A stretch of 64,000 nt of DNA from Klebsormidium nitens. Taxonomy: Eukaryota; Plantae; Klebsormidiophyceae. Below the pieces are notes generated by a model. The model saw only the letters and a program-made list of their open reading frames with translations. It did no database searches and was not told the DNA's origin. A program made the position numbers and the translations under genes. Every line of letters starts with the position of its first letter. Position 1 is the stretch's first letter. The stretch spans positions 62,001-126,000 of the forward strand of contig DF237041.1 of the NCBI GenBank assembly GCA_000708835.1, written 5' to 3'. Positions 17,501-37,800 of the stretch are shown here, piece by piece.

Positions 17501-20500
17501 GCACATCAAAATCGAGTTCTCGCGCCCAGGGGGGCAGGCACGCCGCGCTCAGGCCGCGCGCGCAGAACCGGGGGGTCCAGTCAATCTGAAGCCGCTGAAT
17601 GGGGGCAACCCCCCAGGGGGACCAATGTTTGGGGTTGTGGGCTGGGATAGAGTTGTGCAGAACCCCCCCGGAGGGTTTGCGCAGATGAATGGTGGGGGGG
17701 GCATGGGTCCTCCGCTGTTCATGTTCATGCCGGCGTTCCCTGGGGTGGGGATGGACCCTGGGGCTCCGATGTTGCCTGGTAAGCACCCCCCTAAAAGGAA
17801 CGTTCTGTCCTGTCCTGGGTTCAAAGTGTGGTCGAACCCAGGACATCCGGATAGTAGCGGAGTGCAAACTGCTTAAAAGGAAGGGATTTTCTGGAACCAC
17901 GTTTGGACAGGGATATGCAGAGAATGCGTTCGCGGCCGCAGCCGTTGATCTGTGCCAGTCTTCCAGCTAAGAAACATGGTTGCTTTTCTGCTGTTGCTCT
18001 TGGCGTGGGCACCTGGTAAGCTTCAAATAGACGATGTACCGTCATCTAGGCAGGGACAGGCTATAGACACAGGGGGCGGTGTTCAGATATATACATGACT
18101 GTCCAGACTTTGAATGTTCTTACTTTTCAGTTGCAGCAAGATTCTTCGTCACCAGCATTGCACTCTGAGGAAGTGGCTTCCTAACTTTGTTAGCACGGCG
18201 TAGCAGGCCACTTTTCTGCTGTGAAATGACGTTTCTCCGCGCACCCAACTTGCTCACGTCACAAGTTCCTCTCTTGAGAAGGTTCGTCTTTGTCCTCTTA
18301 ACTTCCTCCTTCCAGCACGTCGCATTCTGGATCCCATATGGCCAAAAGTCCCCCGATTGTCGAGACACAAATGGAACCCTCTTTCACTTCTTCGCAGGTG
18401 TCCAATTCCCCGGGGGGCCTTTCCCCATGCCGCCTTTCCCTCACATGGTTCCCCCCTTCGGGTATGCTGACCCCATGGGCGGATTCCCTGCTTTCCCAAG
18501 GGGCCCTCCGGTTCCTGGTTCACAGGATATGCAAGGGTTCCGAGGCCGACCGGGAGACCCCAAAAGGAAAGGAAAGGGACCCAACGAGGGGCGGGAGGAA
18601 GAGTTCGCGCATGGTGGTAAGTTCTTGGCGGCTAAGAGCGGGCTTCCTTGCTCACGTGTGGGTTGCAAGTCAGAAGGCGTTCGAACTGATTCATCAGTGC
18701 CGGAACGAAGTTGGCAACAAGGGAAGACCATGTTACGTCAAGGGTTTGAGCCAGCTCTGTTGAGGATAGCTACACACGTAGTGGTTCCCTTCCCTCACCT
18801 TTTTTTGGGTGGACACCTCAAGTTGCTTCCATCTGCATTTCCTTTCCTAATCACATTGCAACCCCTTTGTGGGCTTCAAACTTTGGACGATTTTGAGCAA
18901 TTAATGCTAAAAAGGGGTTTCAAACAAACCTCGATGGTAGCGGTGCCCGAGAGCGTTGAAACACGGCGTGGAAGCAACGGGCTGCCCTTTCCAGCTTCCC
19001 TCCAACTGTGCACCCGCTGTGGCGATTAAAAACGGCTCCGTAGCTGCACCTCTCAAAGCAGACAAAATCTTTCTTTTGCGATTCAAACGTGTTCAGCAAT
19101 GATGATTCATGTAGGATTGATCAGCACCGCACGCAGCGCAAAACGGATTGCTTTAAGACGTATTTGCAAATCATAAGTGGCAAATCATAGGTGGTCCTCC
19201 TCTCACGTACGGTTTGCAATTGAGTTCGGTTCATGACCAGTGAGGTAATCCTGCCGCTCATAAGCGTCCCCCTCTTATGCAGGCCCGCTGCGGCGGCCCA
19301 AGGACGGCTCTCGCGACCCTCCCCGCGCGCAGTACACGTTTAGTGAGTTCGAGGCGGAGCTGCAGCGGGAGAACCCGCGCACGACGCTCATGATCAAAAA
19401 CATCCCCAACAAGTACAGGTAAGCAAATTGACTTGGGGTCTGAGAAGTTTTGCATTTGGAGTCTAGGATGCTCACCGATTCGAGAATGTTTGAGGACGTC
19501 TGAGTTTCAAGGAATAGTACTAAGATGTTGGTTGGAGCTGCAAGATTCGTCGCCAAGCGTATGCTTTCATATCCAGATCATATCCAGATTTACAAGTACG
19601 GGAGTGAAGTATCAGGGGCTTCAGGTAATCGAATCTGAATCTATGGCTTTTGGGGCCTCCGCATGCTGGCCCTTTGAGGACGTGAGCTGGAGTGCGCGCC
19701 ATTACCAATGACAGGACTCATGTTCAAGAATCCAAATCCCACCTCTCCCTTCTGAACTAGGATCGGCCTCTCGCAAAAGTTTGTCGACAAAGATCCTCAT
19801 TGGCGAAGTTGTTGGTATGGCATCAACCATTATGAGACAAATAAGCCAACAATCATTGTAACGATATGTAAGCCCCTCAGCAGTTTGCCCTGGACTACCT
19901 CCAAAGAGGTCCCATAGTCTAAAGATGCGTTTGCACTGTTGTATGCGCATTCGCTTTCGGAGACATGCCCACATGCACCACTATCCGTGCTCCAAGGGTG
20001 TATATGCTCCCCCCCCTCGTTTCGTTAAAGACAGTGCTTGCCAACCAACCAGTTGTGCAATGCTGAATAATTCCAATTCTCCGCTTTTCGCAGCCAAGCA
20101 ATGCTGCTTGCGCTGTTGGACGCACACTGCGTGCGCTGCAACTCGAAGCTCCCGCCCGGCAGCAACGAGGCGCCCTCTGCTTACGACTTCGTCTACCTGC
20201 CCATCGACTTCAAGTGAGCATTGCCCCTCGCCGCTCTTTTTCGATTGCGTTCTTCGTGAAATCTTTTCAGATTTACGTTCTAAGAACCTCGGCTCACCTT
20301 CCAAACATGTCTGTCATTGACGTGGGTATGGCCCCTCGCTGCTCTTCTCTAATCAATCTTCGGTAGGTTCCTCTAGATACACGCTCCAGACACCTCGGTC
20401 AGCTTTTCGCCTCTGTCAACGGTTTAAGAAAGCCCACCGCATCCAACGCTCCTGCACATCCGCCCCCGCTGAGAGCTACTGACGTCAGCGTTTCGTTCCT

Positions 20501-21986
20501 TCTTTCCTCCTGTTTTCAAAGTCACGTGACTCTCTTCGTCTCACGATATCTGTACGGGGCACCTTTCAGTAACTTCGACTCCTTGCTGTTTGCCGTAGAT
20601 TAGGTAGTCGACTTCACGTTATAAGCGGCTCCACTCGATTACGGTTCCTATCTCCTAGCTCACAGACTTCCAAAGCGAGCGGACCATTAGTAGGCTGTTA
20701 AGGCAGCACACGTGTACGCTTGCTGCGAAAAGATTGACGCTCCAGAGTGAATGCAGAGCCAAAGCCCGGATGAACTTCGCTTCAGACGGTACTTTTAAAA
20801 GACGCGACACTAACGCCCGGCCAAAAACTCGTGCGCAGGAACCGGTGCAATCTGGGGTACGCGTTTGTCAACTTCACGTCGGCGCAGGCGACCTTGAACC
20901 TGTACAAGGAGTTCCACGCACAGCAGTGGGAGGCGTTCAACTCGCGGAAAGTCTGCCAGGTGCGATGCTTCAAGGTTGGCGTAACTAACATCGTCGATAG
21001 CGTCTTTGAAATATAAAAGGAATTGGAGCAAAGCTTAGAGACGAGAGTGTTGAACGTACCTTGCGGCTCCGCTTGGTCACGTTGAAGCGCTGTGTTTTGG
21101 AGCAGTTGGAAGGTTCACCGTGAACCCTTTGATGATTCTATCGGCGCTCGGACGAGCCAGTTACGAAAGGGAAGTTGAGCGCTAGAACTTGTCTGAGGTC
21201 TTTGTCTTGAGGTCTATCTCTTGGGGCCGCTTTCGCTCTCCGAACACCGTTTGCAACGTCTGGATCAGCTGATCCATGTATTGCACGCTCCACATGCCCA
21301 CTCTGTTCATCGCTCCGATTGTCCCAGAAGCCAACAATCTAACTTAATTCCGAGGATCGCCTCTTTCGCTACATGTAGTCGGGAGTTTCCTGATGTCCTC
21401 AAAAGCGCCCCTTTCTGTTGTCGTCAAAGTGCACTTTATGAGTCCTACGAGTCGAAAAGGTCCCACGCCAAGCAGTGTCACATGTTTCGACTTTCTAGGT
21501 TCGTGAAGATCTTCTAAGTAAGGGACCGTCTGCTGTGATTTGCTGCGGTTTTGAGTGCCAGGCTTGCAGAGTCTTTTCCCAAGGCTGAAGGATGAGCGCC
21601 GCAACAGCAAAGCAATCAGCCCACTGAAAAGCGACTCATTGATGAGGGTTCTGGTTGTTCCGAATCGAGCCCTTCGAGTGACTACTGACCATTGTGCTTA
21701 CCTTTACCGCCAGGTCACGTACGCGCGAGTCCAAGGCCGGAAAGCCCTGGAGGACCACTTCCGGAACTCGCGCTTCGCGTGCGACACTGACGAGTACCTT
21801 CCCCTCGTCTTCAACCCCCCCCGGGACGGCAGCGTTTTGTCCCCCCCCATTGTGGCGGCAGGGCACTTGGCCGGCAAAATAGCTAGTTGCGCCGGCGCGG
21901 TGAGCGCTGTCGCACAAGCGCACGGGATCTCAGCGATGGAGGGGGGGGGGCTGAAGGGGCCCCGGATCGGGCTGGTCCAAAACTAG
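14536..21986 (+). CDS. TEL: MEI2-like RNA-binding protein, TERMINAL EAR1-like (TEL) type, three RRMs
   Basis: Exons 14536-15805, 17380-17778, 18398-18616, 19283-19418, 20094-20213, 20839-20959, 21714-21986. Motifs [43 protein letters not shown], and RRM3 [43 protein letters not shown]. Confidence 0.9.
16553..16626. repeat. 26-bp tandem repeat x3 in TEL intron 1
   Basis: Unit tttgtttggttgagaagaagtcaa(g/t)t starting at 16553, 16579 and 16605. Confidence 0.85.
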
Positions 21987-23719
21987 GCCGCGGGAATCAG
22001 GGTTCTGCAACGTTCCCTAGAAACCCTAATCTTTGGAAATCTTAATTGTGAAAGTTTGCGAATAAAAGAAGGCTCTAGTGGGTTGTTGCTCGCGTGGCAG
22101 CCATTGTTAAAGGGTCGACTCCTCTGCACTGCCGAGTAAGGAGGAGTCGGAGGGAGTTGGGGTACTAGGACGGGTTTGCGCGCGGGAACATGTGAGAATT
22201 CTTTGTGATCCCCATTGTACGAGTATGAAGGGCGGGGGGAAGTCTAGGGCCACGTACTTGTTCGGCCGAAATAAACCGAAGTTGCGGCTGTCTTTCTGTG
22301 GAGTGGCGGGCGGACTCCAAGACAAATATGACACTAGACATGCGTCGAGTGTTTGACCCTGGTAATGTGTGACGGTCATGCTCCTAGAAAGCACGTGCTT
22401 GTAGTGAACAAGAGAGCATTGGAGGCAAGGAGGAGGCAATAAGGGCGTGGTGCTTCCAATAGAGGAATCATAGCTAAACAGGTTCTGCATAAGCATGACG
22501 GACTGTGAAGGGAGCTAGCGTGCAGCCTTGGTAGATGGTCATTGAATCAAAAAGACGGCCGGTTTAACCAAAGCGAGTGGGTCGGCAGGCGAAGAGTGCA
22601 TAAATAATGCATTACTTCACCGCATGCAAATCAACATACGACCTTGGATCCAATCTACCGTCATGATGGTAGAATACGAGTAGTTGTTGTGTAGCCCTGC
22701 TGGCATACCATAGCTCGCGAAATTGACCCGATCGTCGATTGACTAAAAGATTGCGCATTTTCGAATCACTATACATGCAATATGCATGATCTCGTGTGTG
22801 AATTTGTAAGCTATAATGCATGTAGCCAAATAGGCCAGTGGCACGCCGACGATCATGCATCATTGCAGCAGATTGTGTGTACACTGCAGCATATCAACGC
22901 GCGCGCTAGAGCTCTGGCCTACGGTACGCACACTAGCCGGCGCTGCATGCAAAATGCAGCGATCGCAACATGGGAATCAATGTATACGGCATGTGGGGGA
23001 CGTCGATCGGCTAGGACAAGCCTATTAGAGATTGCCAAAGGTTCACATTTATGAGTCTGCCGCCGCGCTTTTCTGTACTGCGGCCTCACAGGCTGGCGCG
23101 CGGCCAGGCCGAAAATGAACCCAGCAAGAATGAGTTGGTATGCACTGGCACATAAGGATCATTGCATATACCACCGCCACGACAGGACATTGTCAACGCG
23201 TAGAACACAATTTTAATTGCTATATGCATCTACCAAAAAGGGGACTTGAAAAACATGGAACTTACACACCAACAACTTCAAAATGGTTGTGTTGAGTGGT
23301 ATTGCAGCGTGATTGCGACAAAGCCAGATAGCATACGCGCAGAGCAGAACTGTTTGCTGTCGCAGGCTACGCCTGGAGAAAACCCGCGACACATGTGGCC
23401 GGCTTGGTCAAAGAACGGCGCCAAAGATCCAGTGCATCCAGAATGATCAAGGGATCGATTAGTCGACTAGTAATTGATCCGGCGGAAGCGAACGCCAAAC
23501 AGACGGCCGTAAACGTCGCGCTGTGCCCTGGCCCCTTCTCAATCAGACGGCCCGACAATTGAACAGAATGCCAGTGAAAGTCGCTAGAAGCTAAAGGCCA
23601 GACATATGGGCGGACGGGATCAGCTGCCCCCGGAGCATCCGCGGGCCGGAGGGCAGCCCACTCCCTCTTGCCACCGATCGCAGTCCCGTCCGTAGGACTG
23701 ACGTCAGCAGATCGTGACG

Positions 23720-26700
23720 TCACGAGATGGTGATGTCAGCGCAGTTCCTGAACACCTCGTTGACGTCCCGCACGCACTCCGTGGTGGAGACGGACTGCGG
23801 GCAACACGTGGCACGAAATCAGACGATGACGTCATTGGAATCAGACAGACCCCTCTGCCAGGTGATGTCTAAGATAATGAGTAACGGCCTTCCCAACAGA
23901 GTTGAGTTTGGCACCGGAGTTCAAAATCAAGTCGGTTCTTGCACGAGTTTGTGCGCCCTGCCCGTTGACCTAATAACGGGTCAGGCTGACTTGCCAACTG
24001 ATGATACCCGATCGGATCCTCAGATCTGTGGACTGCATCGCGCTTTTCTTCGAATGCTCCTTTATTTTTTCCTACGTTTGAAGATACCTCGAAACAGTTG
24101 GATAGAAGCTCGTGTTTACTTCGTAACCAAGTTTCGAGCCTACTTCAAAATATCTCCAAAGGGACCAGATTCAATCAGAAAATGGCTGCAGAAGAGCAGG
24201 AGGGCGTCTTCAGTTCTGGGAACCTTACAGCGTTCAAGTGAGCGGTTACCCATTATATATTCATCGTACGTACGTCAGCATGTCTGCTCGAACCCGAGGT
24301 GCAGCGGTGCGTACCTGCTTGCAGAAGGTCGACGGGCAAGGCGTACCGGGCGGGTTGCAGCTGTTGCCCGTGACATAGGAGAACTGGAGCACGCATCTGC
24401 AAACGTATACGTAGAGTGTGATGGTAGGAGAACTTATCTAGTTGCTTGGTGAGGAAGGTGCTCAATTCCTGGTGCCTGAACCTTGTTTGGTACCTCCGGA
24501 ATCAACGTGGGTGACCGAAGTTCGTAACTTCTTGTGGAGCGACATTCAAAGTCCAATCTACACGAGGCTGTGCACTTATAGATTGGGAGCTTAGAAGCTA
24601 AGAGATTCCTCGCCAAGAGATATGTCATTGCGGGTGCTTCAAGTGGGTTCGGCGACTTAGCTATTCACAGATTTCTGCATCCCAGTTCTCTTTCGAGTTT
24701 TGCCGGGCAAGTGAACAGTGAAACGTTTCCAGGCCCCTCAGCATCGATAAATGAACTGGCCGGTCCAAGGGCCTGATCAGCGGGTCTTTTGCTGGACGCC
24801 AACGTGCAACTTTTTCCATTCTAATAAATTGCGGCTCCCACTCCGTAGCTGATCATGAAAACGAACTTCCGTCACTGTTGAAAGTTGCAATCACAATTGA
24901 ATGAGGCGCCCTTTCGGCCCTCAACTTGCGTGTCTTGGTCGCTATGATTGACAAAGACGTCAAGCAGAAAACAGGAGTTTATACGAATGGATGAGTCACC
25001 GTTCATCTGCTCTACCTACCGCCTGCTAGGAGATTGTGCTCATTCCCGGACCCTTTATCCCCTTCCTTTCTTTGTGATGACGTCACGTGGTCTTACTTGG
25101 AGTCGACGGCGTTGCAGCGGATGTCGTCAGGGATGACGTAGCTCATGTTGTAAAGCGACGCGTGGCGCCAGTCGGGGCCGCCGCCGCCGGACGTACACGT
25201 GTTGCACGCAGGGTCGCTGGCGTCGGCACTCCAGGGGTGGGGCAGGTAGTACCAGGGCAGGCCGGGCGCAACCTGGGCTTGACCTGCGTTTTCGTAAGCA
25301 CAGTAAATCCTCCAACGTCGAACTGCTCTTCCTCTTGCTCCCTTCGACTTCCAAGCTACTTTGACAATTCCGCGAGAAATTTATGGGGAAGTTTGGTGTC
25401 TCGGGTGAGCTTCGTGTTTGAATGGGAAAGCCGCCGAAATGTCGTTGTCGAAAGCCACAGCCTTTCGGCTTTGAGGGCTCTTTCCCTGCTTTGCACGAGA
25501 TGCACGGAACAGTAGCGCTCTCAGCTTGTGCGGCAGTTGTTGCCAGCCACTTCGTCCCTCCCCTCCGGCTTGTCCTGTCCAAAAACTGACGGGTCCAAAC
25601 AAATTCACAGGGAGGAGAGGATTCGAAGGAAACACTTTGGATGTGTCGACGCTCCTGGAAGCACGGGAGAATGACGAAGAGGGAAAAGAAAAGAATTCGA
25701 TCGCACCCAGGAGCAAGCTGAGACGAACGAAGGACAACAAAAAGGATGGATGAAAATTGGGCAAATCTGATTTGTAGCTTTGTTTTCGCCTCTTTCCGAC
25801 AAGAATCACCGGGCGCTGGTTGCAGCACGTGGGCGTCGAGGCACTCCTGCGTGAGCGAGGTCGCCTCGTGGCCGTCGAATGCGCAGACGCGAAACTCGAA
25901 ACGGCCTAAATGGGTGGCCGTCGCGGCTACCTGGAACGTCACGGTTGAGCCGGCCGTAAAGGCTGCGAAAAATAGAAGAAACCAGTCAAGTATTCCGCAA
26001 TTTCAAGCTTGCCATAAATCTAAGACGACCCTGACTTGCAGGCGTAATCGCAGTGGGAGTCTACATTGGTCGAGCTGTCAGTGTTGGTTAAGCTCTACTT
26101 CGCAGTCTGTGTCAGTGGTTGGATTTGGAAGCCGACTGGACCCCGAAGCACGTGATGAGAATGCCCACGCATTTAATCGAGAACGGGCGGCTGAGGGCAC
26201 TTACAAAAGGAAAGAGATTGGTCCGAGCAGATAGGCCAATCCAAAGAGTCGATGTTTGACAACTGCTCTGCGGTGGAGTATAAGACATTTTTTAATACAT
26301 CTCGATAAGAAGTTTCTCTCGACTTTCTACTCCTCTTGGGGACCAGTGTGCCTCAAAGTTAGGTACTTTGACTTCCCTTTATTCGACTGTCCAGCTCAGG
26401 GATAAAACCCAAGATTCTACCGAGTTCCCTGCTATCTAGCCTGCCAAAGTGGTTCTCGATGGAAGAACAATCCCCTCTCTCAGACTAATGCTGATTGCAT
26501 TCCACAGAAGTTTGTCTGAGACGCCGCACACTTCACGACTGCGATGCGCACCGTTCGTGACTGGCACCTCGTGCGGCTGGTTGTATGCATTCCATGTTGC
26601 GATCTGGTCCTGTCCGCCGTCGCCACACAGGTTCCCAACCCCGTTGGCTGCCTGCAGAATGATGGAAATGTAGACTGTGTGGATTCGGTTCCGGAGAGTC

Positions 26701-27487
26701 CACCTGCCTTACCAATCAGAATAAATAGCAGACTTCGTTTTCCTCAGTCCATTCTCCATATAGTATTGAAGAAGGGCGGGAGAAAAGCACTCAAGTCAAC
26801 TAAGGGCGTTATAGTTGAATCCCCCCCCTAATTGCAGCAGCTTGGAGTGTCCTTCTACATGCTTAACGAGGTAAGGTTGATTCGAATGAGCGCAGACTTT
26901 GGAGACGACAATTTGTTCGTCCGAAGTCCAAAACTTGAACAGGAGACAAACGCCATGTGGGTTACATCGGATGTGTCCTCCTGCAATGACTTGCACAAAT
27001 CAACAGCGCCTTTTCACCTGGTGCTCTAAAAAAATTGCTCAAGCAATCAAACCTCCTCCAAACGTCAGTGACTTGCCACTCCTACATTCTGATTCCAAGC
27101 AAGCACGAGGGCACTTTCGATATGGCTTAGGCTAATTCGTATTATCAAGCGTTGTGATTTGAAAGGCCGTAGCTGACAAGTCCTGGCACCATTGAAAGCC
27201 AGTCGCTTTACAAACAAACAAACATATCTGATGCCTGTCCACAGTGTATCTGCAACGTTCATGGGCTTCTTGATGTCAGCAAGGCATCAACCCAGCGCAA
27301 TTTCTGACAATCAGCTGCAAAGCCCTCTATTTCAACCACCTACTTGCGGGTTGGTGTCGCTTCCAAACAGCACCGCATTGAGGTGCTGCCGACCCTGGGG
27401 AACGGTCACCCACGCGTGCCCCGCCACAATGGGGACAGCTGTCAATGCTGCAATCGTCAGCAGAAGGACCGCCGGTTGCCACTTCAT
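23720..27487 (-). CDS. Secreted lytic polysaccharide monooxygenase, AA15-like (chitin-binding type-4/LPMO fold), ~246 aa
   Basis: Six phase-consistent exons: 27344-27487, 26552-26651, 25810-25962, 25097-25283, 24315-24396, 23720-23794. Signal peptide MKWQPAVLLLTIAALTAVPIVAG is followed directly by His1 (HAWVTVPQGR). Further motifs NLCGD, TATHLGRFEFRVC, TQECLDAHVL, CVLQFSYVTGNSC and EVFRNCADITI-stop. Confidence 0.88.
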
Positions 27488-29300
27488 CTCGGCCGCCATC
27501 CCTTTCTTCGGTCGTCAGCTCAGCGTTATCCAATGCTGCTGAAATGGTGGGAAATGAGGAGGGTTTAGGTGAAGGGTCTTCTTAGCTCAGCTCGCAAATG
27601 GAGAGGAGTACGAGGGCTAGATTAGATGCCCGCAATGTGCGGCGTCAGCTTTGTCAAACTAGAGTTCTCGAGTCGCAACTCATCCAACCCAGAGAGGTTT
27701 CTCAAAAGACAAAAAGAATACCAAAGTGGCCAGTTTGTGAGCTAGACAGCGAATCGCCGCGTCAATGTCTTTGCCCAGTGAGAGCATGAGCGAACATTTT
27801 AGGGACCAGGTTTCAGGACTAGCATCAAGTACTGTGACGTCGACTCAGCGCTGCTGAGAAGAAGCTAGGTATGTCCAGCAGTGTAAAGACGGGAGGTTCC
27901 TACCTCAATAAGTTAATGTTGATCTGATGGCACCGATCTCAACATTGTTGCCCGCATAACCGAAGGCTGAAGCCGATAACACTGACACACTAACTTCGCC
28001 TTTTGAGGGACTTCTAGCGTGTCGAACCTTTGATCTGCATGAGAAGGGTACCCGACCTACTGTATGCAGTACCACCGTGACAGCGTTGTCAAGAGCACTG
28101 TGCTTTATCCACTCTGACGTATGTTCAACCGCTGGATAGAGCTGAAAGCATCGTTTTGCAACTCTTTCTTGTGATCAATCATTTGGCAGATTCCGGATGA
28201 GTCACTGCCGGCAGTGGCCGCTTGCAGATCTGCAGCAGTAGCGGAGCTCGTCAAGTATTCGTCGTCAGCCTCCAGACAGCCGCCGAATGACGGTTCAAGT
28301 GTTGGTACGTGTGCCATGTTCCGCCTGAAGCCCGTACATTCACTTGTCTGTGCACAAGTGGGCTCCACTGAGGCAGTTATGTACGCAAATGAGACCTGAC
28401 CGTTAGATCTAGTAACTTGACTCGCCTTCGTCACATCGTGCCCGTCCAATATACTCTGCGCGCTCTATGAGGCCTCTCGCCAGTCAATGATTGGTTGCAA
28501 CTTGCAACCTGCAGTACGAGGGAGTCGATGCAGGTGCACTTTTGCGTACGGTACGGCCGTCGCAAGGAAAGCAACCGTCGGCGCAACGATCATCCGTAAG
28601 CATAAGCTTTTACCTAACAGCACCGGATCACTGACGTGCGCAGTATCTTAACGCCAAGCGTACAATTTTAGAACGCGGGCTCCCCTGAATAGCGCTCTAC
28701 CCTTACAAAGTTGAAAGAACCTCTCATCCTGGAGGGCCAATTCTGCTTCCAAGCACTCAGGACGTGAATCAGGTCAGCCTGAGGCGCCGGAACAACACCG
28801 TCAAACAGCCGATCTCGGGATTGACACTCCCTTTCGGCAGGACGACACAGCAATTTTATTGCCCGTGGCATTTGTTGCTTTGGTCCTGGGACAGGTGTCA
28901 CTAACCATTGCGGGGCTGCTGAAGATTTACACTTCTTGATCACAAGCAGCTGTTTGTCTTGAAAGTTCACAACGCATGAGCTTCTCAGAGTATGAGCTAA
29001 ACTTCTAGCTACCTCGTTTCAAACCAAAAGCTTCCTTTGCTTAGGCAGGGCAGGCTTGATCTAGGACCGGCACTATTCCTGCGCCTGGACTGACAGCAAA
29101 GTTGAACGAACGTCGATTGCAAGGGTTCGCCCAATATTGCGACAGAGTGCAGCTGGCATTGGTCACTGCTGCCTCCGAGTTGTGTTCAAGAACCTTATCG
29201 TTTGTCCCGATCAAACTTTCAAATCTCGCTTGACACTGCCAGCCAATCTTGGACCAAACGCGCAAAGCACTTTTGGGCCACTTTACAGTCTGCATCAAGT

Positions 29301-32300
29301 ATGGAAGCCCCAAATGTCCCCCAGAAGTTGGTGCTGTCTGGCATTCTGTGGGGCCTGCTTGCGGCCTTGGCGGCGAATGCTGGAGCTGAGAATTCAGCAG
29401 AGGTGAGCTGGACGGCTGATGTGGTCCGAAAGGGCAAGTTTCAATTTGTGAATACGACTCAGCTCAAGAAATACTATCAAATAGTGAGTCAATCAGCCAG
29501 ACGCTTTTCTGCCGAGGGAATTCGACTGCTCCTGAACTCTCATGCAAGGCTTGCAGTCTGACTGTCAGAGTTCAGAAACGTGCGCCAATCCTGACAGAAT
29601 TGCACCTCTGACAGCTTGAATCCTCCTCTTTTGTTTCTGGGCCCTTCATCACAAACCGCTCTAAGTGGCTACTTGCTGGCGCAACTGGCTTGTCCAATTT
29701 GGTTATTTCTCAAAATAATTCTCCTCTTACTTTCGATCATAATCCAAACTCAGATCTACGCTCTTCTCTACCAGGGTCTCCCCGAAAGGACCTCCACTTC
29801 TACTCCCGCCTTCTTACTGAACCCATCAAGCTGAATCACTTGCTGACACCTGTCAACCACGCAGCTGCCACCTGTCGCCGCCCGCCACCTCCTCCAGCAG
29901 TCCGCCCCCTTCTGCACCGCGGCCGGCCAGTACAAAGCGGACCCATCCACCAATTGTACGCGCTTCTGGCAGTGCACCGGCACCGGCCAGGGGGCCTACA
30001 AACAATGCCCCGGGGGAACCGCCTTCAACGAGGCGTGCTCCTGCTGCGACTTCCCGTCCAACTTTGTGTGCGCCTCCGGGGCGACTCCTCCCCCGACCAC
30101 TGTTGCCCCGACACCTGTCCCAACCACTGTCGCCCCGACACCTGTCCCGACCACTCCTGCCCCGACACCTGTCCCAACCACTGTTGCCCCAACTCCTGCT
30201 CCGACCACGGTTGCCCCGACACCTGTCCCGACCACTGGGTTTCCAACGCCTGCTCCAACCTCGTCAGGCAAGCTCCATGGTGCCCTTGATTTCAATGAGG
30301 TTCTCGCACATTTCTTTCTACTCTCTCTCAAGTCTTCTGACGGAAATTTGAACCTGAAAAGCCTATTAAAGCGGCAGTTGGAGTCCGCACTTGAGATACC
30401 AAGGTCTGTGTGCGAAACCAAAAGAATTGCTGGGCTTGGAACGCTTTGAGGCTGCGTTTACTTTGAAGTCATCTGCGCTTCGTCTATCTACGATATTTGC
30501 GTTTCAGCCCGGCCCGCACGACGCTTCCAGAACGTGTGCATGCCCAGTTAAAGCGCAACTAGAGTTTCATCTGGAATGGTGACCACTGAAAGAATTGCTC
30601 GAGTCCCCTTCGGACTTTAAATTAGTCCATTACATATTTCTCAGTTGAGCGAGGCTCGCATAGCAGGGTGACCAGAACCACTGAAAGAGGAGCTCTATTT
30701 GTATTTGATAACAGCCGTCACTTCCGGAATCCGTCCAAGCAGTAGGCACGCAAAGAAAACCGCATTCCGACCAGAATCATCTCGATTTGCATCACGGAAG
30801 TCAAGCAAGCGTATCTCCTCCCCCTTCAGGCAACCCGTGCACCACGGTCGGCCAATACTATGCCGACACGTCGACCGGTTGCACCCACTTCTGGCAGTGC
30901 ACCGGTCCAGGACAGGGTGGCTACAAGCAGTGCGTCTCGGGGACCGCTTTCAACGCGGCGTGCAACTGCTGCGACTACCCGTCGAACTTCGTTTGCGGGG
31001 GGGCGACGCCGGCTCCGTCAACCGGGGGACCGACCCCCCCCCCTGCAAGTACGACAACGCCCGCCCCTTCGGCAACGCCCGGGGCGACGCCACCGGTTAC
31101 CCCAACTCCAACCGGTGAGATTTATGGTTGAGGTTTACAAATCTACCTTCTACTTGTTTGGACAGTACGTCTGGGATTGTGAAGGCTGATGGTAGTTCGA
31201 AGGAGCCCTTGCTGTCGTTGCGAAGCTGAGCAGTCGACCGGGAGGTGGAGGAATTTCCTTCTTGGTTGTCGGGGGAATGCACGAAGGCAGGTGGATTGAC
31301 AATACGATGGCAATATTCAGAAAACAAGTTGTACAGGGTCAGTACCGAAAACAAGGCTCCTGGAGCGGAGCGACTCCCAAAAGAGACGGTTGGCTGCGGC
31401 TTCCCTCTATATGAGAGGGACGTGGTCAAAGCTCGGACACCGTAAACTTCGGATCTCCTGGCTCGCGAGGTTTCCAGGTCACCCTTGCTGAGTCACCTGC
31501 TTCGCCAACTTTCATTCCAAATCCCAAGCCTGCCTTGCAATCAACTCTCAAAAGCGACGCCTGTTTAGATAAGCTCGATCTTCTCGTTGATGAATCCAAA
31601 CGGGTCGAACGTTGTATTTTAGTAGTCAGCGATCTGAATCGATTTCGCAGGTGCTCCCGGTACTGTTTCCGCCTACTTCACCTCCGCCGACTTCGCCCAG
31701 TTCTTCCTGCACATGAACGACGCCGCCTGCCACCACCGCAACTTTTACACGTATGACGCGTTCGTGACGGCAGCAAGCGCCTTTTCCGGCTTCGGCACGA
31801 GCTCCGCTTCGCCGACAATCAACAAACAGGAGATCGCCGCGTTCATGGGCCAGATCTCACACGAGACGACGGGTAAGCTTTGCCGCTATCCAAAAAACAT
31901 CACTGAATCTGAAACGAGTTCGACCGCAGTTTCCCGAAGCTGCTCTGCAGCGGAAGTGATGGGCGCGGCATGTTCTGATTCCCCAAGTTAGACCCCTGAA
32001 TAAGATATGTGTCTGACGTCCCCGGTGTTTCCAAGATAGATTGGTTTAGGTTGTCTGTTCGGGGGTTTCGAAAGGGTTAGCGATCAGTTTTACGGACGGA
32101 GAAGTCTGACCGGATCTATAATATTTCGTTCTCAGATTAGGTATTGTTTGCAGATCCGCCACGTTCTTGGACGGATGTCCCGTCGTTCCGACTAAAGACA
32201 GAATCTTGAGTCTAACGTCATTTTAAACGAGCCCTGCAGATGCTCACGAGGCCCGCTTCTGCTCCTCTCACGTATCTACTAAAAGGATGACACGTGTCGC

Positions 32301-33939
32301 TCCCTGGTGCAGGCGGGTGGGCGTCCGCCCCTGACGGCCCCTACTCGTGGGGGCTGTGCTTCGACGAGGAGGCGACGTCCGTGCCCTACTGCGCCGCCAG
32401 CGCCGACTACCCGTGCGCGCCGGGGCTCAGCTACCACGGCCGGGGGCCCATCCAACTCTCCTGGTAACTTTTACCCCGACCACACTTAGCTTAGAGATAA
32501 TCAGTTTTCGTGATGGTGCGATCCTTACGGGAGAAGATGCGGTCGTGCACCGACTACCCTTGCGCCCCGGGGCTCAGCTACCACGGCCGGGGGCCCATCC
32601 AGCTGGCCTGGTAGGTTTTGCCCCGACCGCATGTTTCATCCGTGAAATTGCAATCATTGAACTGGTGGAAGAATTGCTAAGGAGAAGACGTGCAGTCGGG
32701 GCGCACGAAACCTACAGGACTGCATGCCATTTCTCCATCTAGTGGTTTGACATTTCAGGGTTGAAATATGAGTCGGAGCAGTTGTCGGAAGAGGAAGCAG
32801 TTGTGTCGTTTATCAGGTTCGTGTTGCGAATTGTGCAAGGATACGATGAACGGAGGGCCCAGCCAGCCGTGTAGAAGTGTTGAAATTTAAACGGAGACGG
32901 AATTGTTCCTGGAATACCGTAAACATCAATCTGTATATCCGAGAGTTCGAGAAGTAGCCCCTCATCCAATTGCCGTTCAAGGAGGCTATCAAAGAAGAGA
33001 ATACTTGGAAAGTCGGAGATAAGCAGTGATGACGTCTGGACACAACGATTGTCGGCCAGTGTACACGCTTACATGATGGAAACGGTAAAAGGGTGCAACA
33101 AGAGCTTTGATATGTCCAGACCAGAAGGTCGCAGCTTGGAAAACCTCCTTTTCCCCAGTCCACATGTGCTCGGCAGATTAATTCGGATCTTTGGTTTCTC
33201 TGTTCCATTTTTGTAGAGCGTGCAACGGGCTGTCCTGTCGGATCTTAAAGGTTTTTCGCAACGGGCTGAGCTCTTGCGAATCCGTTCCAGCAGTTTCTTG
33301 AGAGGAAGGCAGTGGCGGCCCTTCTTATTCGTGTCCTGATCATCCATTTTGCTACTGATCTGAGCGCAGTATGCAATCGTCTGGATAGCCCAATCGACTT
33401 TTCTTTCATGAGGCCTTTGTTCTAAGAGTCTCTTCGCTCCACGTCTCGTCTCCCCCACTGGTTCAACGCGCGCTTTTCCAAGCCTTCTTTCCTATTCCAA
33501 AACGTATTCGCGGATCAAGATTTACAAGCTTCCATCTTCCTCACTTTTCCGTCCGTCCGCTCTCAGGAACTACAACTACATCCCCACCGGCAGGGCCATC
33601 GGTTTCGACGGCCTCAACTCCCCGGGCGCCGTTCTCGCCGACCCAGTCACTGCCTGGAAGACCGCCATCTACTTTTGGATGACACCCGCCGGAAATAAGC
33701 CCTCCTGCCACGCTGTCATGACCGGGGGATGGACCCCGAGCGCCGCCGACGCGGCCGCGAACCGCGTCCCGGGTTTCGGCGTCGTGACTAACATCATAAA
33801 CGGGGGGTTAGAGTGCGGCGCCGGGCGGCCGAACACCTCGGGGGGGCCGGATAGGATCGGGTACTTCACTCGGTATGCTGGGATCCTTGGAGTTGGAACT
33901 GGGAACAACTTGTCCTGCGACAACCAGCAGCCGTTTTAG
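29301..33939 (+). CDS. Secreted GH19 chitinase with two N-terminal CBM14 (peritrophin-A-type) modules and Pro/Thr linkers, ~511 aa
   Basis: Exons 29301-29402 (signal peptide), 29865-30267 (CBM14-1 plus PT linker, GC donor), 30830-31114 (CBM14-2 plus linker), 31651-31872 ([22 protein letters not shown]), 32313-32463 ([30 protein letters not shown]), 33567-33939 ([40 protein letters not shown]). Both catalytic Glu positions are present. Confidence 0.93.
30090..30262 (+). repeat. 27-bp coding tandem repeat (TTVAPTPVP) forming the chitinase linker
   Basis: About six imperfect units such as ccgaccactgttgccccgacacctgtc. Confidence 0.85.
32551..32628 (+). repeat. Intronic duplicate of the chitinase exon-5 3' end and donor
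   Basis: Copies 32404-32480 ([19 protein letters not shown]|GTA) 147 nt downstream. Confidence 0.88.
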
Positions 33940-34872
33940 GGCGCTTTTTGACCGTAGCTTTTGGAAGTGCGATTGTTTTGACCGTAGGTCCATCTGCGAG
34001 GGGCTGATCAGGATTCACAGAATTGGGATATTGCTCGCCACGATCTGGTTTCACATGACACCGACTTCACGACACGTCATGACGATGACTGGATTTAAGT
34101 GTAGTTCGCTGACAGGCAGATGAGGTAAACGAAGAAGAGAACACGGGGGCTATCATGCTCCCAAAAGCGGCTGAGACGTAGACGTAGGGACCGTTGAGAA
34201 GTGCCTAAGTTCAGAGGAAAGTCAATCAAGTACTGACTAAAATCCTGATAGAAGCCCGGGGATTGCACCGCCATTAAAACGCTGAGAGGCCGCACACAGT
34301 GATCGCGCAGACGCTGAAAGATTTGAAGTGTACTGCAGAATCAAAACGCAAACGACTTCACACGTCGATCGCTGTCATCTGTTCGCCGGCAAAAGTTTGA
34401 ACAGATCGACGCGGATGATTCCGGACGATTCCTAGCGCGAATTTACATTTGTCACGACCTTATAGAGGCTGCATGAACGACCGGGCTGTAATTGAAGTTC
34501 AGCAGCGTTTGCGAGCTTAACTGATTGACCTGCACTTAAGGTCAGCTCCAAAAGTGCAAACAGTTCTGATATGATCCCACCATGGGGAGCCTCAGCGTTT
34601 AGGCCCAGAGAGGCAAAGTGCTATTATGCTATCTATGACAAATTAAAACATAACCTGCATGCCACTAAGCTGCCAACTACGTTACGGTAGCTGAAAACAT
34701 CTCGCAGTCATGTTGCACTCAATCCGTTTGAGTCATCATGTACATCTATGCATTGACTGACTAACCATTAACCGTTAAATTACCAGCTGTCCTTTGCCAC
34801 GCATGACAACTCCTTATACGACGTGTCTCTTTCATTTGTAATTCCTTTTCAACATCTATGAGCAACAATTGA

Positions 34873-37800
34873 TTAGGCCTCTGGCTTTGAGGCGGCAGCT
34901 GGAATGCAGATCTTCTTGTGACCCGCCCGCCAATCGATCGCCTGTAGGGAAGAGAGACTCAAGCTCGTGAGTAGAGTGCAATAGTGAAGCCTGCAGACCC
35001 GGTCCGTAAGAAATGGTCACCTCGACCAAACGAGACTGTAGTCCGCAACAGTACGGTGTCCAATTCGAAGACGGGTCCACTTTTGTAAACGTCGTAATGG
35101 AGCCAGCTCGCCTTTCTGCTGAGAATAGCAGTCAGCCACAGGAGTTTTAGAATAGCGCACAAAATGAACCCTGAAAACATTGTGAGGTCGGAGCCCTATC
35201 AAGACGCCTCTACAAAGCACAGGAACACACGGCTAGTTAGAATTTCATAACTTGCTGGAACTTACTCGACCAATGTCGTATGCACAAGGTTGCCACCGCA
35301 TTCGATCTGTTGCAGAGTAAGTTAAGGCTCTAGTGACTACTGATTCTGGTTTAAACAACGCTGCGAGATCCAGTTGTCAACAAGACTCGACTTCGACCCA
35401 ACAACGGCACCCGCCTAAGCTCGAACTTAACACTTTTCAGGAACGAGACACCTAGAATTCCGAATTGCAAGCGTTCGCTTTTTAAGATTTGGAATTGGTG
35501 CGCCAGCCGCTGTGTTGGACAGCCCACCTGGCATTCTTTGGAGCAATAAAAAGTTCCGCACCGCCGCCCGCACTGCTGAAACCGTCCCTTCATGCTTTCC
35601 CGCTGGCGGCACTTCTGCGTAACCGACCACGAAGCAAGCAGATTAGCAAAAGTAAGTTTGCCACCAGCCTGGGACGGGTGGGGTTAGTTAGGGGGTTCCG
35701 GGTGAGTACGGGTGCGGAGCAGGTGACTTTCAGGGTTAGGTCGGAAGTGTTAGTGTAGGAGCTTCCTTTTGCTAGAGCTTACTTTTGCTCAATTGAAGAG
35801 ACAAATTTCCGACGACTTCATGAATTACGACCGGAGCTTGCTTTTGGGCGCCTGAAAGCAGGTCACTTTGTGGAACTCTCGGCTTTCGTCGCAGGATCTT
35901 TGCAAGATGGTGTTCAAGAAAAGTGGTTGGGAGTAAGGACGCATCGCGCACGTGCTCTAGAACACTTCAGCTTAGTTGGGTGGCCCGTTTTCGGTGTTCG
36001 TGATCTGCCGACGTCTGCACGCCTGTCCTACCGAACGTGCCCATCAAGTTCGAAACAAACACGCCAAGCTGACCGTTATAAACTTAACTTCCGCTGGGTC
36101 TCGGCGAAATTCTGACAGAAAACGACAACCACACACTACTCGTCACTGTAGTCCATGTTCGCCCATCAAGTTCGAAACGAAACACGCCAAGCTGACCGTC
36201 ACAAATTTAACTTTCCACTAGGTCTCGGCCAGATTCTAACAAAAACCGACAACCACACACTACTCGTCACTGTAGTCCATGAAGATGCTGGCTCTTGTTG
36301 GAGTTACAATCTGAAGAATGTTGACTTGTCAAATTTAGATACGAAATACACAAGAAGCTCAAGAATTGAATCAATCAGCGTGTTACAGGGCTAGGAACTC
36401 GGCCAGAAAGACAGTTCTTCAAATACACAGCACTTGCAAATTTAAGCAAAGAGTAAACCTCACTTAGCCAGTCCTTCGGTGCCAAATCAGTCCATTCACG
36501 CAAGCGCTTAAGTGCTACCGCCGTTCAACGACATCAGTCTCTGCGGATCCGTCCAAAGGCAGCCCAAATGAGCAGAACGTGAACCAAATAGAACGAAGGT
36601 CCTTTCAAGTCGTGTCTCAAACGCTCACCGCCACCAGTGGGCATTTCTTGAGCCCCGCCTCCGCTGCGGCCCTCCCCCAAAGCGCCTCCGCCGTCCCCCC
36701 CGCTTCGCTCCAGCACTCCCCCGCCCTCAACTTCCACAAAAGCTCCGGATCGTCCGACTGACGCATCGTTTCCATACGGGCGACGCTCCGCTCGTCGTCG
36801 AAATCGCGCCGCGCCAGAAACCTGGTCACGATGTCCACGCCCCTCGACCGTACAAACTCGAGGTACGCACCGCCTTCTACTGCCCGGGAGAGAAGTTTCA
36901 GGGCCTGCGCGCAGGCCGCGCGAGCGCGCGCCCACAGCGGCGCGTCGTCCGCCCAGAAGTCGCGCATCTCCCACGAGTGCAGCTGCCGGAGCTCCTGCGT
37001 CGGCAGCCGTTTCGGACCGTCCGGATCCGCAGCTCGACCGTCCGATTGAAGAGCAGAGTCGTCCGAGGGCCCGGCACCACCGTCCAAATGCGTCGCACCA
37101 GTGTCCGCATGCGCCACACCAGCGTCCGAGTGCGGAGCACGACCGTTCGCATACGGAGCACGGCCGTTCGCCTGCGGAGCACGCCTGTCCGACTGCGGAG
37201 CACCTGTGTCCGAATCCTCGCCGGAGCTGCTGCTATCGTCCGAAGGCCTGTCCACCAATCGGGCCGCGGTCAGCAGCAGCTCGAGAAGCGCTTTCACGAG
37301 ACCCTTTTTTGCCCACACCTGCGCCAACGCCCCCGGGGCATCGTCCCGGGTGCTCGCCTCCAACACTGCCAACACGTGGAGCCCCGCCCTTGCGGGGCCT
37401 TTGACGATCGCCCGAGCCGCGGCTCTCGCCAGCCCTAGTTCTCGAGCGATGTCCGGCAGCTTCGCGGCCGCCGCTTGGTCGTCTCTGACGTCGGTCCGGA
37501 GGATGACGTCACACAGGACCCACCCTTTGTACATGGCATCGCGCGCCCAGGCCGCGCGCGCGTCATCGGACTCGCGCGCCGTTTCGGACGCGTCTCTGCG
37601 GTAGTGTTGGACGGCATCGCGTCCGAGTTGGAGGGCGCCCCGCTGAGCGGCGGCCAGCCGGCAGGCGCCGGACTGGGTGCAGTATACGCCGATCTGTAGA
37701 GCAGCGAAACAGGTCTGCGTGTTTCGGAATGCTGACGGGGTGAGTCTGAGAGGATCTCGGCCTTCTTTTTGGCACAATCTGAGCATCGCTTTGACGTCTA

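What the first reader, a model, noticed from the sequence alone, without database searches (positions are those of the whole stretch)
23720..33939. Head-to-head LPMO plus CBM14-GH19 chitinase: candidate two-enzyme chitin-attack module in a plant-lineage alga
Seen: two adjacent, divergently transcribed genes (ATGs at 27487 and 29301, ~1.8 kb apart), both with signal peptides. One is a His-brace LPMO, the other a GH19 chitinase with two chitin-binding modules. Established: LPMOs oxidatively nick crystalline chitin and act synergistically with hydrolytic chitinases (e.g. Serratia CBP21 with ChiA/B/C). Land-plant antifungal defence uses GH19/GH18 and essentially lacks LPMOs, fern Tma12 (AA10-type) being the known exception. 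Inference: this is a co-regulated antifungal/anti-grazer or chitin-scavenging gene pair, which I do not know to be described in streptophyte algae. Caveat: every gene in this window sits in a divergent pair, so orientation alone is weak evidence; the functional complementarity is the signal.
Basis: partly seen in the sequence, partly recalled or inferred. Interest (0 to 1): 0.85.

Follow-up and report, generated by a model that had tools for sequence, protein, structure and literature searches.

The report
Neighbouring LPMO and chitinase genes in Klebsormidium
Two intact neighbouring genes of the alga Klebsormidium nitens encode a secreted copper oxygenase (AA15-like LPMO) and a plant-type chitinase carrying two animal-type chitin-binding modules; they plausibly attack chitin together, as known fused versions in protists suggest, but co-regulation is unproven and the enzyme partnership itself is already known.

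Summary
The window is Klebsormidium nitens scaffold DF237041.1.

**LPMO gene (minus strand).** It has six GT-AG exons, 27499-23720, and encodes KFL_000920150 (250 aa). The protein has a signal peptide ending just before His28. A second histidine (His103) and an F-x-x-C-A-D motif are present. The only solved relative found by sequence is Thermobia AA15.

**Chitinase gene (plus strand).** It has six exons, 29301-33939, 515 aa. The layout is signal peptide, two CBM14 modules with Pro/Thr linkers, then a complete GH19 domain with its catalytic residues. The GH19 domain groups with land-plant class I (PR-3) chitinases. One public run holds a spliced exon 1-2 contig.

**For a functional link:**
- Both genes are under strong purifying selection (dN/dS about 0.07-0.08).
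- A relative diverged to synonymous saturation keeps the head-to-head order.
- Two protist proteins fuse homologues of both enzymes in one chain.
- A 40%-identical LPMO homologue carries a hevein chitin-binding module.

**Against or missing:**
- The intergenic region has no conserved non-coding sequence.
- No LPMO transcript contig turned up.
- Linkage was not seen outside the Klebsormidium relatives.

AA15 LPMOs in algae, and AA15 fused to GH19 or CBM14, were published in 2018. So this is a new member of a known kind, of moderate interest. This scan had already noted the LPMO gene alone, on this same stretch (s1-351142).

The parts
27344..27499 (-). LPMO exon 1: start codon, signal peptide, mature N-terminal His28 (HAWVTVPQGR)
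   Evidence: Exact translation to P0001. His1 follows the cleavage motif in the orthologues and in P0002, P0060 and P0111.
26552..26651 (-). LPMO exon 2 (CGDGGQD loop region)
   Evidence: aligned to 5MSZ.
25810..25962 (-). LPMO exon 3: second brace histidine His103 in THLGRFEFRVC
   Evidence: Pfam LPMO_10 hit on this exon. Aligned to the H-I-G-F-F-E-F-R-L-C stretch of Thermobia AA15. Invariant in A2.
25097..25283 (-). LPMO exon 4 (surface loop with a Gly-rich insert, then YNMSYVIPDDIRC)
   Evidence: conserved in L002 and L004.
24315..24396 (-). LPMO exon 5: CVLQFSYVTGNSCNPPG motif
   Evidence: The motif is shared with P0002, P0060 and 5MSZ.
23720..23794 (-). LPMO exon 6 with stop: EVFRNCADITIS (Phe241 at the position of the tyrosine in EEYRNCADIAI of Thermobia AA15)
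27500..29300 (.). 1.8-kb intergenic region between the two start codons; putative promoters, no annotated gene
   Evidence: no gene called; no Rfam match; no sequence conserved with L004.
29301..29402 (+). GH19 exon 1: start codon and signal peptide
   Evidence: Contig of run X1 covers 29270-29402 and continues into exon 2. GT donor at 29403.
29865..30238 (+). GH19 exon 2: CBM14 module 1 plus Pro/Thr-rich linker (27-nt tandem repeat). The 3' border is uncertain (30224, 30238 or 30279).
   Evidence: Pfam CBM_14 at 1.9e-06; start fixed by the spliced contig; repeat.
30801..31126 (+). GH19 exon 3: CBM14 module 2 plus Pro/Thr-rich linker. Borders are uncertain by a few codons.
   Evidence: Pfam CBM_14 at 2.9e-05; 78% nucleotide copy of module 1; three 515-aa models.
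31651..31872 (+). GH19 exon 4: start of the catalytic domain with QISHETTG (first catalytic Glu)
   Evidence: Pfam PF00182 at 4.5e-20; alignment to Brassica juncea chitinase 2Z37.
32313..32463 (+). GH19 exon 5: CFDEE (second catalytic Glu) and [11 protein letters not shown]
   Evidence: Pfam PF00182 at 2.3e-18.
33567..33939 (+). GH19 exon 6 with stop: C-terminal half of the catalytic domain
   Evidence: Pfam PF00182 at 2.4e-47; 56-66% identical to land-plant chitinases.
32547..32631 (+). Partial duplicate of the 3' end of exon 5 with its donor site, lying inside intron 5 (pseudo-exon)
   Evidence: 88% copy of 32400-32484; weak PF00182 hit below the cut-off.

Best explanation
These are two resident, intron-bearing nuclear genes of Klebsormidium nitens, and both products are secreted. 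One is a single-domain copper LPMO of the AA15 type. Its predicted copper site is the N-terminal His28 and His103, with Phe241 in the axial position. The other is a class I-like (loopful, PR-3-type) GH19 endochitinase, anchored to chitin by two CBM14 modules where land plants use a hevein domain. The most likely mechanism runs outside the cell. The reduced LPMO oxidatively nicks crystalline chitin from fungi or other chitinous organisms. That creates chain ends and disordered regions, which the CBM14-tethered chitinase then hydrolyses. Shown here: gene structures, domain content, catalytic motifs, purifying selection, conserved adjacency in one diverged relative, GH19 transcription and splicing, and the existence of homologous LPMO-GH19 fusion proteins. 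Inferred: chitin as the LPMO substrate, synergy, any shared regulation from the 1.8-kb intergenic region, and the biological role (defence or nitrogen scavenging).
For: Gene models and identity. LPMO family: Pfam LPMO_10 at 39.1 bits. The only solved chain found by sequence is Thermobia AA15 5MSZ (E 7.6e-8 with the single sequence, 1.2e-9 with a profile; no AA10 chain up to E 10). H28, H103, F241, C244, A245 and D246 are invariant in four homologues. The ESM Atlas's own model has TM 0.74 to a green-algal LPMO_10 cluster. GH19: Pfam; catalytic SHETTG, CFDEE and [13 protein letters not shown] aligned to 2Z37 at 53.5% identity; it groups with Marchantia, Musa, Malus and Brassica chitinases, consistent with PMC8547705. 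Selection: LPMO dN 0.14 / dS 1.6-1.7; GH19 domain dN 0.13 / dS 1.8. Linkage: L004 keeps the order RRM, LPMO(-), CBM14x2-GH19(+). Rosetta-stone fusions: P0060 (LPMO_10 + GH19; its LPMO matches the profile at E 5e-24) and P0111 (LPMO_10 + 2 CBM1 + GH19). The literature reports the same (PMC5823890; PMC12028343). Chitin as substrate: homologue P0002 carries CBM18. Transcription: spliced exon 1-2 contig.
Against: No enzymatic or expression data link the two genes. No contig of the LPMO was found in the four runs laid, while GH19 was present at very low depth. No conserved non-coding block lies between the genes. The RRM gene beside the LPMO is conserved in the relative too, so conserved adjacency may be general collinearity. 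Other GH19 loci examined have no LPMO neighbour. Some AA15 enzymes also cleave cellulose (PMC5823890), and this LPMO has no binding module of its own. The structure prediction was poor (pLDDT 41.5 and 45.7).
Confidence: 0.55

Rival explanations
1. Chance neighbours. Both genes are real secreted carbohydrate-active enzymes, but they are regulated and used independently. Their adjacency and its conservation simply reflect local collinearity in a genome where orientation alternates.
For: Orientation alternates across all four annotated genes. The RRM neighbour is conserved as well. The intergenic region has no conserved element. Only GH19 gave a transcript contig. No LPMO lies next to GH19 in three other loci.
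Against: The prior probability of a GH19 neighbour is about 2.5e-4 under the gene counts assumed above. Homologues of exactly these two domains are fused in at least two protist proteins. The zf-MYND neighbour on the other side is not kept in L004, while the pair is.
Confidence: 0.3
2. Endogenous wall or matrix remodelling. The LPMO acts on the alga's own cellulose or another wall glycan, and the chitinase on GlcNAc-containing endogenous glycans. This would parallel AA15 in insect cuticle turnover and plant chitinase-like proteins in cellulose assembly.
For: TdAA15A cleaves cellulose as well as chitin, and insect AA15s remodel the animal's own chitin (PMC5823890; PMC9156745). The LPMO has no chitin-binding module of its own.
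Against: The GH19 keeps both catalytic glutamates and carries two chitin-type CBM14 modules. The nearest LPMO homologue with a binding module carries hevein, which binds chitin. My searches found no report of chitin in Klebsormidium walls.
Confidence: 0.1
3. Recent foreign insertion. The pair is a piece of giant-virus or bacterial DNA that is not part of the alga's own biology.
For: K. nitens (as K. flaccidum) carries phycodnavirus-like inserts elsewhere (PMC5294986). An Atlas structural neighbour is named after an Ectocarpus virus protein.
Against: Each gene has five GT-AG introns. GC content is like the flanks. Orthologues with the same exon structure occur in two diverged relatives. Purifying selection is strong. 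The GH19 groups with land plants. IMG/VR holds no relative.
Confidence: 0.03

Closest known systems
AA15 lytic polysaccharide monooxygenases (Thermobia domestica TdAA15A, PDB 5MSZ; Sabbadin et al. 2018)
   Same: Secreted, with an N-terminal His after signal-peptide cleavage. The second His sits in an H-x-G-x-F-E-F-x-x-C motif. It shares the C-V-L-Q-(W/F)-x-Y-x-T-G-N motif and the C-terminal R-N-C-A-D-I motif. 5MSZ is the only solved structure found by sequence. The family is already reported in algae, and fused to GH19, GH18 and CBM14.
   Different: Identity is only about 20-30%. It has Phe where TdAA15A has Tyr in the C-terminal motif. It has an extra Gly-rich loop (residues about 140-180). 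It comes from a streptophyte alga, a group not in the taxon list I read from the 2018 paper (Chlorophyta is listed; 'Klebsormidium' does not occur in its text).
Land-plant class I (PR-3) GH19 chitinases, e.g. Brassica juncea BjCHI1 (PDB 2Z37) and Marchantia basic endochitinase B
   Same: Loopful GH19 catalytic domain, 53.5% identical to 2Z37, with both catalytic Glu and the Ser/Thr motif. It groups with embryophyte sequences in a quick tree. It is secreted and has N-terminal chitin-binding modules joined by Pro/Thr-rich linkers.
   Different: The binding modules are two CBM14 (peritrophin-A type) instead of CBM18 hevein. A lectin survey found no hevein domain in Klebsormidiophyceae and describes hevein/GH19 as shared by Embryophyta (PMC6362431).
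Natural LPMO-GH19 fusion proteins of protists (P0060 from JGI transcript-like contigs; P0111 from MMETSP)
   Same: They contain homologues of both window genes in one secreted chain. P0060's LPMO domain is 27% identical to the K. nitens LPMO over its full length, with the same motifs. Their GH19 domains are 50% (P0060) and 42% (P0111) identical to the K. nitens one.
   Different: They are one gene rather than two divergent genes. Their GH19 domains fall in a different branch from K. nitens and land plants. They have no CBM14, and P0111 has CBM1. The K. nitens pair is therefore not simply a split fusion.
Bacterial chitinolytic systems with AA10 LPMO plus chitinases (Serratia CBP21 with ChiA/B/C)
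   Same: The concept is the same: an oxidative LPMO boosts hydrolytic chitinases on crystalline chitin. This rests on established knowledge and was not tested here.
   Different: A different LPMO family (AA10), GH18 rather than GH19 partners, and bacterial operon or regulon control.
Fern Tma12 (AA10-like insecticidal protein)
   Same: An LPMO-like protein in the plant lineage.
   Different: Tma12 is AA10-like and thought to be bacterial in origin (fern genome paper PMC6786969, seen). The K. nitens protein matches AA15 and not AA10 by sequence.

Membership tests
AA15 LPMO | Signal peptide cleaved so that a histidine becomes residue 1 of the mature protein | tested here: met
   MAAEMKWQPAVLLLTIAALTAVPIVAG|HAWV. 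The same G/A|H junction occurs in the orthologues of L002 and L004 and in P0002, P0060 and P0111. Cleavage itself is predicted, not measured.
AA15 LPMO | Second copper-ligand histidine at the position of the brace histidine of TdAA15A | tested here: met
   His103 in THLGRFEFRVC aligns with APHIGFFEFRLC of 5MSZ. It is invariant in alignment A2.
AA15 LPMO | Aromatic residue (Tyr in TdAA15A) in the conserved C-terminal x-x-C-A-D motif near the copper | tested here: inconclusive
   EVFRNCADITI against EEYRNCADIAI of 5MSZ: Phe241 replaces Tyr. Phe is conserved in P0002, P0060 and P0111. From general knowledge, Phe at this position is normal in many chitin-active AA10s.
AA15 LPMO | Closer in sequence to AA15 than to other LPMO families | tested here: met
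   5MSZ is the only LPMO chain found in the PDB (E 7.6e-8 and 1.2e-9). No AA10 chain appears up to E 10. Foldseek on a weak model also ranks 5MSZ first (E 1.6e-3).
AA15 LPMO | LPMO immunoglobulin-like beta-sandwich fold with a flat copper face | tested here: inconclusive
   My AlphaFold models were poor (pLDDT 41.5 and 45.7). The ESM Atlas's own model (pTM 0.71) matches LPMO_10 clusters at TM 0.64-0.74.
AA15 LPMO | Copper-dependent oxidative cleavage of chitin or cellulose | not testable with these tools
   Needs recombinant protein and product analysis.
GH19 chitinase (class I/II, loopful) | Complete GH19 catalytic domain | tested here: met
   PF00182 positions 4-69, 64-117 and 117-232 lie on exons 4, 5 and 6.
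GH19 chitinase (class I/II, loopful) | Two catalytic glutamates and the Ser/Thr that positions the water | tested here: met
   SHETTG, CFDEE and [13 protein letters not shown] align column for column with 2Z37 and Brassica CH25. The residue roles come from general knowledge of barley and Brassica GH19.
GH19 chitinase (class I/II, loopful) | Groups with plant loopful chitinases rather than bacterial or loopless ones | tested here: met
   The quick ML tree places it in a 14-row group with Marchantia, Musa, Malus, Brassica and others (SH-aLRT 81-86, modest support). GH19ED places two K. nitens sequences in CHIT1.
CBM14 (peritrophin-A) | Match to the CBM14 profile above the curated threshold, with the cysteine framework | tested here: met
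   28.3 and 24.5 bits against a cut-off of 22.1, over profile positions 1-53 of 53. The orthologue P0169 scores 24.9 bits. Chitin binding itself is not testable here.
Co-regulated two-enzyme chitin module | Adjacency conserved in relatives beyond background synteny | tested here: inconclusive
   The order is kept in L004 at dS 1.3-1.8. The RRM flank is kept too, while the zf-MYND flank is not. Only one relative's contig spans both genes.
Co-regulated two-enzyme chitin module | Shared cis-regulatory sequence or correlated expression | tested here: inconclusive
   The intergenic region has no conserved block. There is a GH19 spliced contig but no LPMO contig in the four runs, at very low depth. 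Neither result decides the question.
Co-regulated two-enzyme chitin module | Independent evidence that the two domain families work together (gene fusion elsewhere) | tested here: met
   P0060 and P0111 combine LPMO_10 and GH19 in one chain. Sabbadin 2018 reports AA15-GH19 fusions.

The most novel reading that the evidence does not exclude
Klebsormidiophyceae run a chitin-response toolkit built on CBM14 modules instead of the hevein and LysM modules of land plants. The LPMO-chitinase pair would be its effector arm. The GH19 here would be the closest algal relative of land-plant PR-3 chitinases. If so, the ancestral PR-3 chitinase of the plant lineage worked beside an AA15 LPMO that embryophytes later lost, while swapping CBM14 for hevein. 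An unchecked note of this scan (s1-346662) reports a CBM14-ectodomain receptor kinase in the same genome. That would supply a perception arm.
Probability: 0.15. Interest if true: 0.65.

Novelty: new member of a known kind. Interest (0 to 1): 0.4.

Why it matters
If the pair works as proposed, a close algal relative of land plants uses oxidative as well as hydrolytic chitin attack. Land-plant immunity is not known to use the oxidative part. It would also show that the plant PR-3 chitinase catalytic domain predates its hevein module, having first been combined with an animal/protist-type CBM14. The idea is cheap to test, because both proteins are small and secreted. The underlying enzymology (LPMO plus chitinase synergy, AA15 in algae, AA15-GH19 fusions) is already published, so the gain is evolutionary context rather than a new mechanism.

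Tried and rejected
**Structure.** I ran AlphaFold2 on the LPMO with a 2-row and then a 4-row alignment. Mean pLDDT was 41.5 and 45.7, so neither model is usable. Foldseek on the better one gave only a weak top hit to 5MSZ.

**More relatives of the LPMO.** The word-based protein search found just three proteins. The metagenome scan with the alignment found nothing. A back-translated CVLQF..YVTGNSCNPP pattern found nothing either, although L004 comes from a JGI metagenome. The IMG/VR scan found nothing.

**Full-length GH19 protein.** It could not be used as a query, because a spliced protein has no reference in these tools. Its exons were searched separately instead. The 50%-cluster library did not return the K. 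nitens protein itself.

**Expression.**
- The only reads call (window 23700-29690, four runs) gave one contig.
- The gene identifiers occur in no searchable paper.
- They are also absent from the supplements of the one K. nitens transcriptome paper I checked.

**Other checks.**
- Rfam found nothing in 22000-35000.
- A viral or recent-HGT origin was considered and rejected, given the introns, the orthologues and the plant-like GH19.
- Three other GH19 loci were inspected for LPMO neighbours, and none had one.

Full report
**What the window is.** The LPMO-coding exon retrieved one public protein, KFL_000920150 of Klebsormidium nitens (P0001, 250 aa). Its contig look-up returned scaffold DF237041.1 of assembly GCA_000708835.1. 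That locus (L001) is 100% identical to window 13720-37499. The annotated genes there are, in order:
- an RRM protein on the plus strand (window about 14536-21986);
- the LPMO on the minus strand (23720-27499);
- a 515-aa CBM_14 + Glyco_hydro_19 protein on the plus strand (29301-33939);
- a zf-MYND protein on the minus strand (from about 34873).

**The LPMO gene.**
- Searching GT/AG borders for an exact translation to P0001 gave one solution with six exons: 27499-27344, 26651-26552, 25962-25810, 25283-25097, 24396-24315 and 23794-23720.
- The N-terminus reads as a signal peptide that ends in VAG immediately before His28.
- Pfam gives LPMO_10 at 39.1 bits against a cut-off of 23.
- Against all PDB sequences, the only LPMO chain found is Thermobia domestica AA15 (5MSZ). 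The E-value is 7.6e-8 with the single sequence and 1.2e-9 with a two-sequence profile. No AA10 chain appears up to E 10.
- In those alignments His103 (THLGRFEFRVC) lies on the APHIGFFEFRLC stretch of 5MSZ, CVLQFSYVTGN lies on CVLQWFWRTGN, and EVFRNCADITI lies on EEYRNCADIAI. The brace histidines are therefore present, and the nearby aromatic residue is Phe instead of Tyr.
- The ESM Atlas holds this protein. Its own model (pTM 0.71) matches green-algal LPMO_10 clusters at TM up to 0.74.
- My own AlphaFold runs were poor (pLDDT 41.5 and 45.7). Foldseek on the better one ranked 5MSZ first, but only at E 1.6e-3. I treat that as weak.

**The chitinase gene.**
- Pfam finds CBM_14 twice and Glyco_hydro_19 over profile positions 4-232, on three exons.
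- A 262-nt contig of run X1 covers 29270-29402 and then continues with the sequence that starts at 29865. That start is preceded by AG, and 29403 begins with GT. Intron 1 is therefore removed in that molecule, and the gene is transcribed and spliced.
- Three 515-aa models differ only in the Pro/Thr linker borders.
- The layout is signal peptide, CBM14, PT linker (a 27-nt tandem repeat), CBM14, PT linker, GH19.
- The two CBM14 exons are a tandem duplicate (78% nucleotide identity).
- The catalytic domain is 53.5% identical to Brassica juncea chitinase 2Z37. It keeps SHETTG, CFDEE and [13 protein letters not shown].
- An exhaustive profile-free search with exon 6 gave land-plant chitinases as best matches, at 56-66% identity.
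- In a quick ML tree the K. nitens domain sits in a group made of Marchantia, Musa, Malus, Brassica, Fraxinus and others. Support is modest (SH-aLRT 81-86).
- This agrees with the GH19 Engineering Database, which lists two K. nitens sequences as the only non-embryophyte members of its plant-type group CHIT1 (PMC8547705).
- A lectin survey found no hevein domain in Klebsormidiophyceae and calls the hevein/GH19 combination embryophyte-wide (PMC6362431). CBM14 thus takes the place of hevein here.

**Relatives and selection.**
- Two further taxa were recovered. L002 is a Logan contig of SRR14092358 with all six LPMO exons and the RRM neighbour.
- L004 is 20.7 kb of a 63.5-kb JGI metagenome contig. 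It holds, in the same order and orientation, the RRM gene, the LPMO on the opposite strand and a CBM14x2-GH19 gene.
- Introns and intergenic DNA no longer align with the window. L002 and L004 are about 76-81% identical to each other throughout.
- Nei-Gojobori estimates are dN 0.14 / dS 1.6-1.7 for the LPMO and dN 0.13 / dS 1.8 for the GH19 domain. That gives dN/dS of about 0.07-0.08 with synonymous sites near saturation.
- His28, His103 and Phe241 are kept in both orthologues. Both genes are clearly functional, and the head-to-head order has survived long divergence.
- The RRM flank survived too. The 5.3 kb beyond GH19 in L004 shows nothing like the window's zf-MYND gene.
- No conserved block was found between the 1.8-kb intergenic region and its 3.4-kb counterpart.

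**Evidence that the two enzyme types work together.**
- I searched the K. nitens LPMO against the 150 GH19 representatives. P0060 (737 aa) matched over residues 7-247, at E 5e-24 with the profile and 27% identity by BLASTP over the full domain. P0111 (640 aa, MMETSP) matched weakly.
- Pfam confirms LPMO_10 + GH19 in P0060 and LPMO_10 + two CBM1 + GH19 in P0111. Both have a signal peptide followed by His1.
- These are Rosetta-stone fusions of the two families. They match the published statement that AA15 domains are fused to GH19 in Oomycota and Haptophyta, to GH18 in Chlorophyta, diatoms and tunicates, and to CBM14 (PMC5823890).
- Diatom chitinases carrying LPMO_10 and multiple CBM_14 domains are also reported (PMC12028343).
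- The closest non-Klebsormidium homologue of the LPMO is P0002, 40-44% identical, from a transcript contig of ERR11260139. It ends in a CBM18 hevein domain. That points to chitin as the substrate of this sub-group.
- In the GH19 tree the fusion proteins fall in a different branch from K. nitens and land plants. The pair is therefore not a simple split of such a fusion.

**What remains open.**
- Co-regulation is untested. The single reads call showed one low-depth GH19 contig and no LPMO contig in four runs, which decides nothing.
- No paper I could search mentions these genes or an LPMO in Klebsormidium.
- Three other GH19 loci have no LPMO neighbour. They are a compact eukaryote and two loci with bacterial-type gene content; one of these is a GH18/GH19 cluster.
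- The biological role cannot be separated with these tools. Defence against fungi, nitrogen scavenging and wall remodelling all remain possible.

**Verdict.** The functional reading is plausible and gains indirect support. The pairing of AA15 with GH19, and AA15 in algae, are published knowledge. The new points are three:
- an AA15-type LPMO in a streptophyte alga;
- its conserved head-to-head position beside the chitinase;
- a plant-type GH19 that carries CBM14 modules.

I rate this a new member of a known kind, with interest 0.4.

Noticed in passing
window 32547-32631: An 88% copy of the last 64 nt of GH19 exon 5 plus its donor site lies 147 nt downstream, inside intron 5. It still reads [20 protein letters not shown] in frame and is followed by GT. 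It may be a decaying partial exon duplication or an alternative donor.
   Followed up: partly
window 29913-30072 and 30838-30997: The two CBM14 exons are a tandem duplication (78% nucleotide identity). The L004 relative shares it, so it predates their split.
   Followed up: partly
P0060 (loci L005, L006) and P0111: These are natural secreted single-chain fusions of an AA15-like LPMO with a GH19 chitinase. P0111 also has two CBM1 modules. P0060 has a Cys-rich module and long PT/RTPT repeats between the domains.
   Followed up: partly
L003 (ERR11260139 contig), protein P0002: An intronless transcript encodes a 40-44% identical LPMO with a C-terminal CBM18 hevein domain. The organism is unknown. 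A lectin survey found no hevein domain in Klebsormidiophyceae, so it is probably not Klebsormidium.
   Followed up: no
L004 15349-20687: Downstream of the GH19 orthologue, the relative has 5.3 kb with no similarity to the window's zf-MYND neighbour. Synteny breaks on that side only.
   Followed up: partly
same genome, other pieces (scan notes s1-346662 and s1-326892): Earlier notes report a receptor-like kinase with a CBM14-type ectodomain, and a CYBDOM protein with a histidine-less LPMO-like head, in this genome. Together with this locus they hint at a wider CBM14/LPMO-related surface toolkit.
   Followed up: no
L009 / L010 (GCA_040777765.1 contig): This locus has bacterial-type gene content: three GH18 and two GH19 genes in a row next to an HTH regulator. 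It came up only as a GH19 relative.
   Followed up: no
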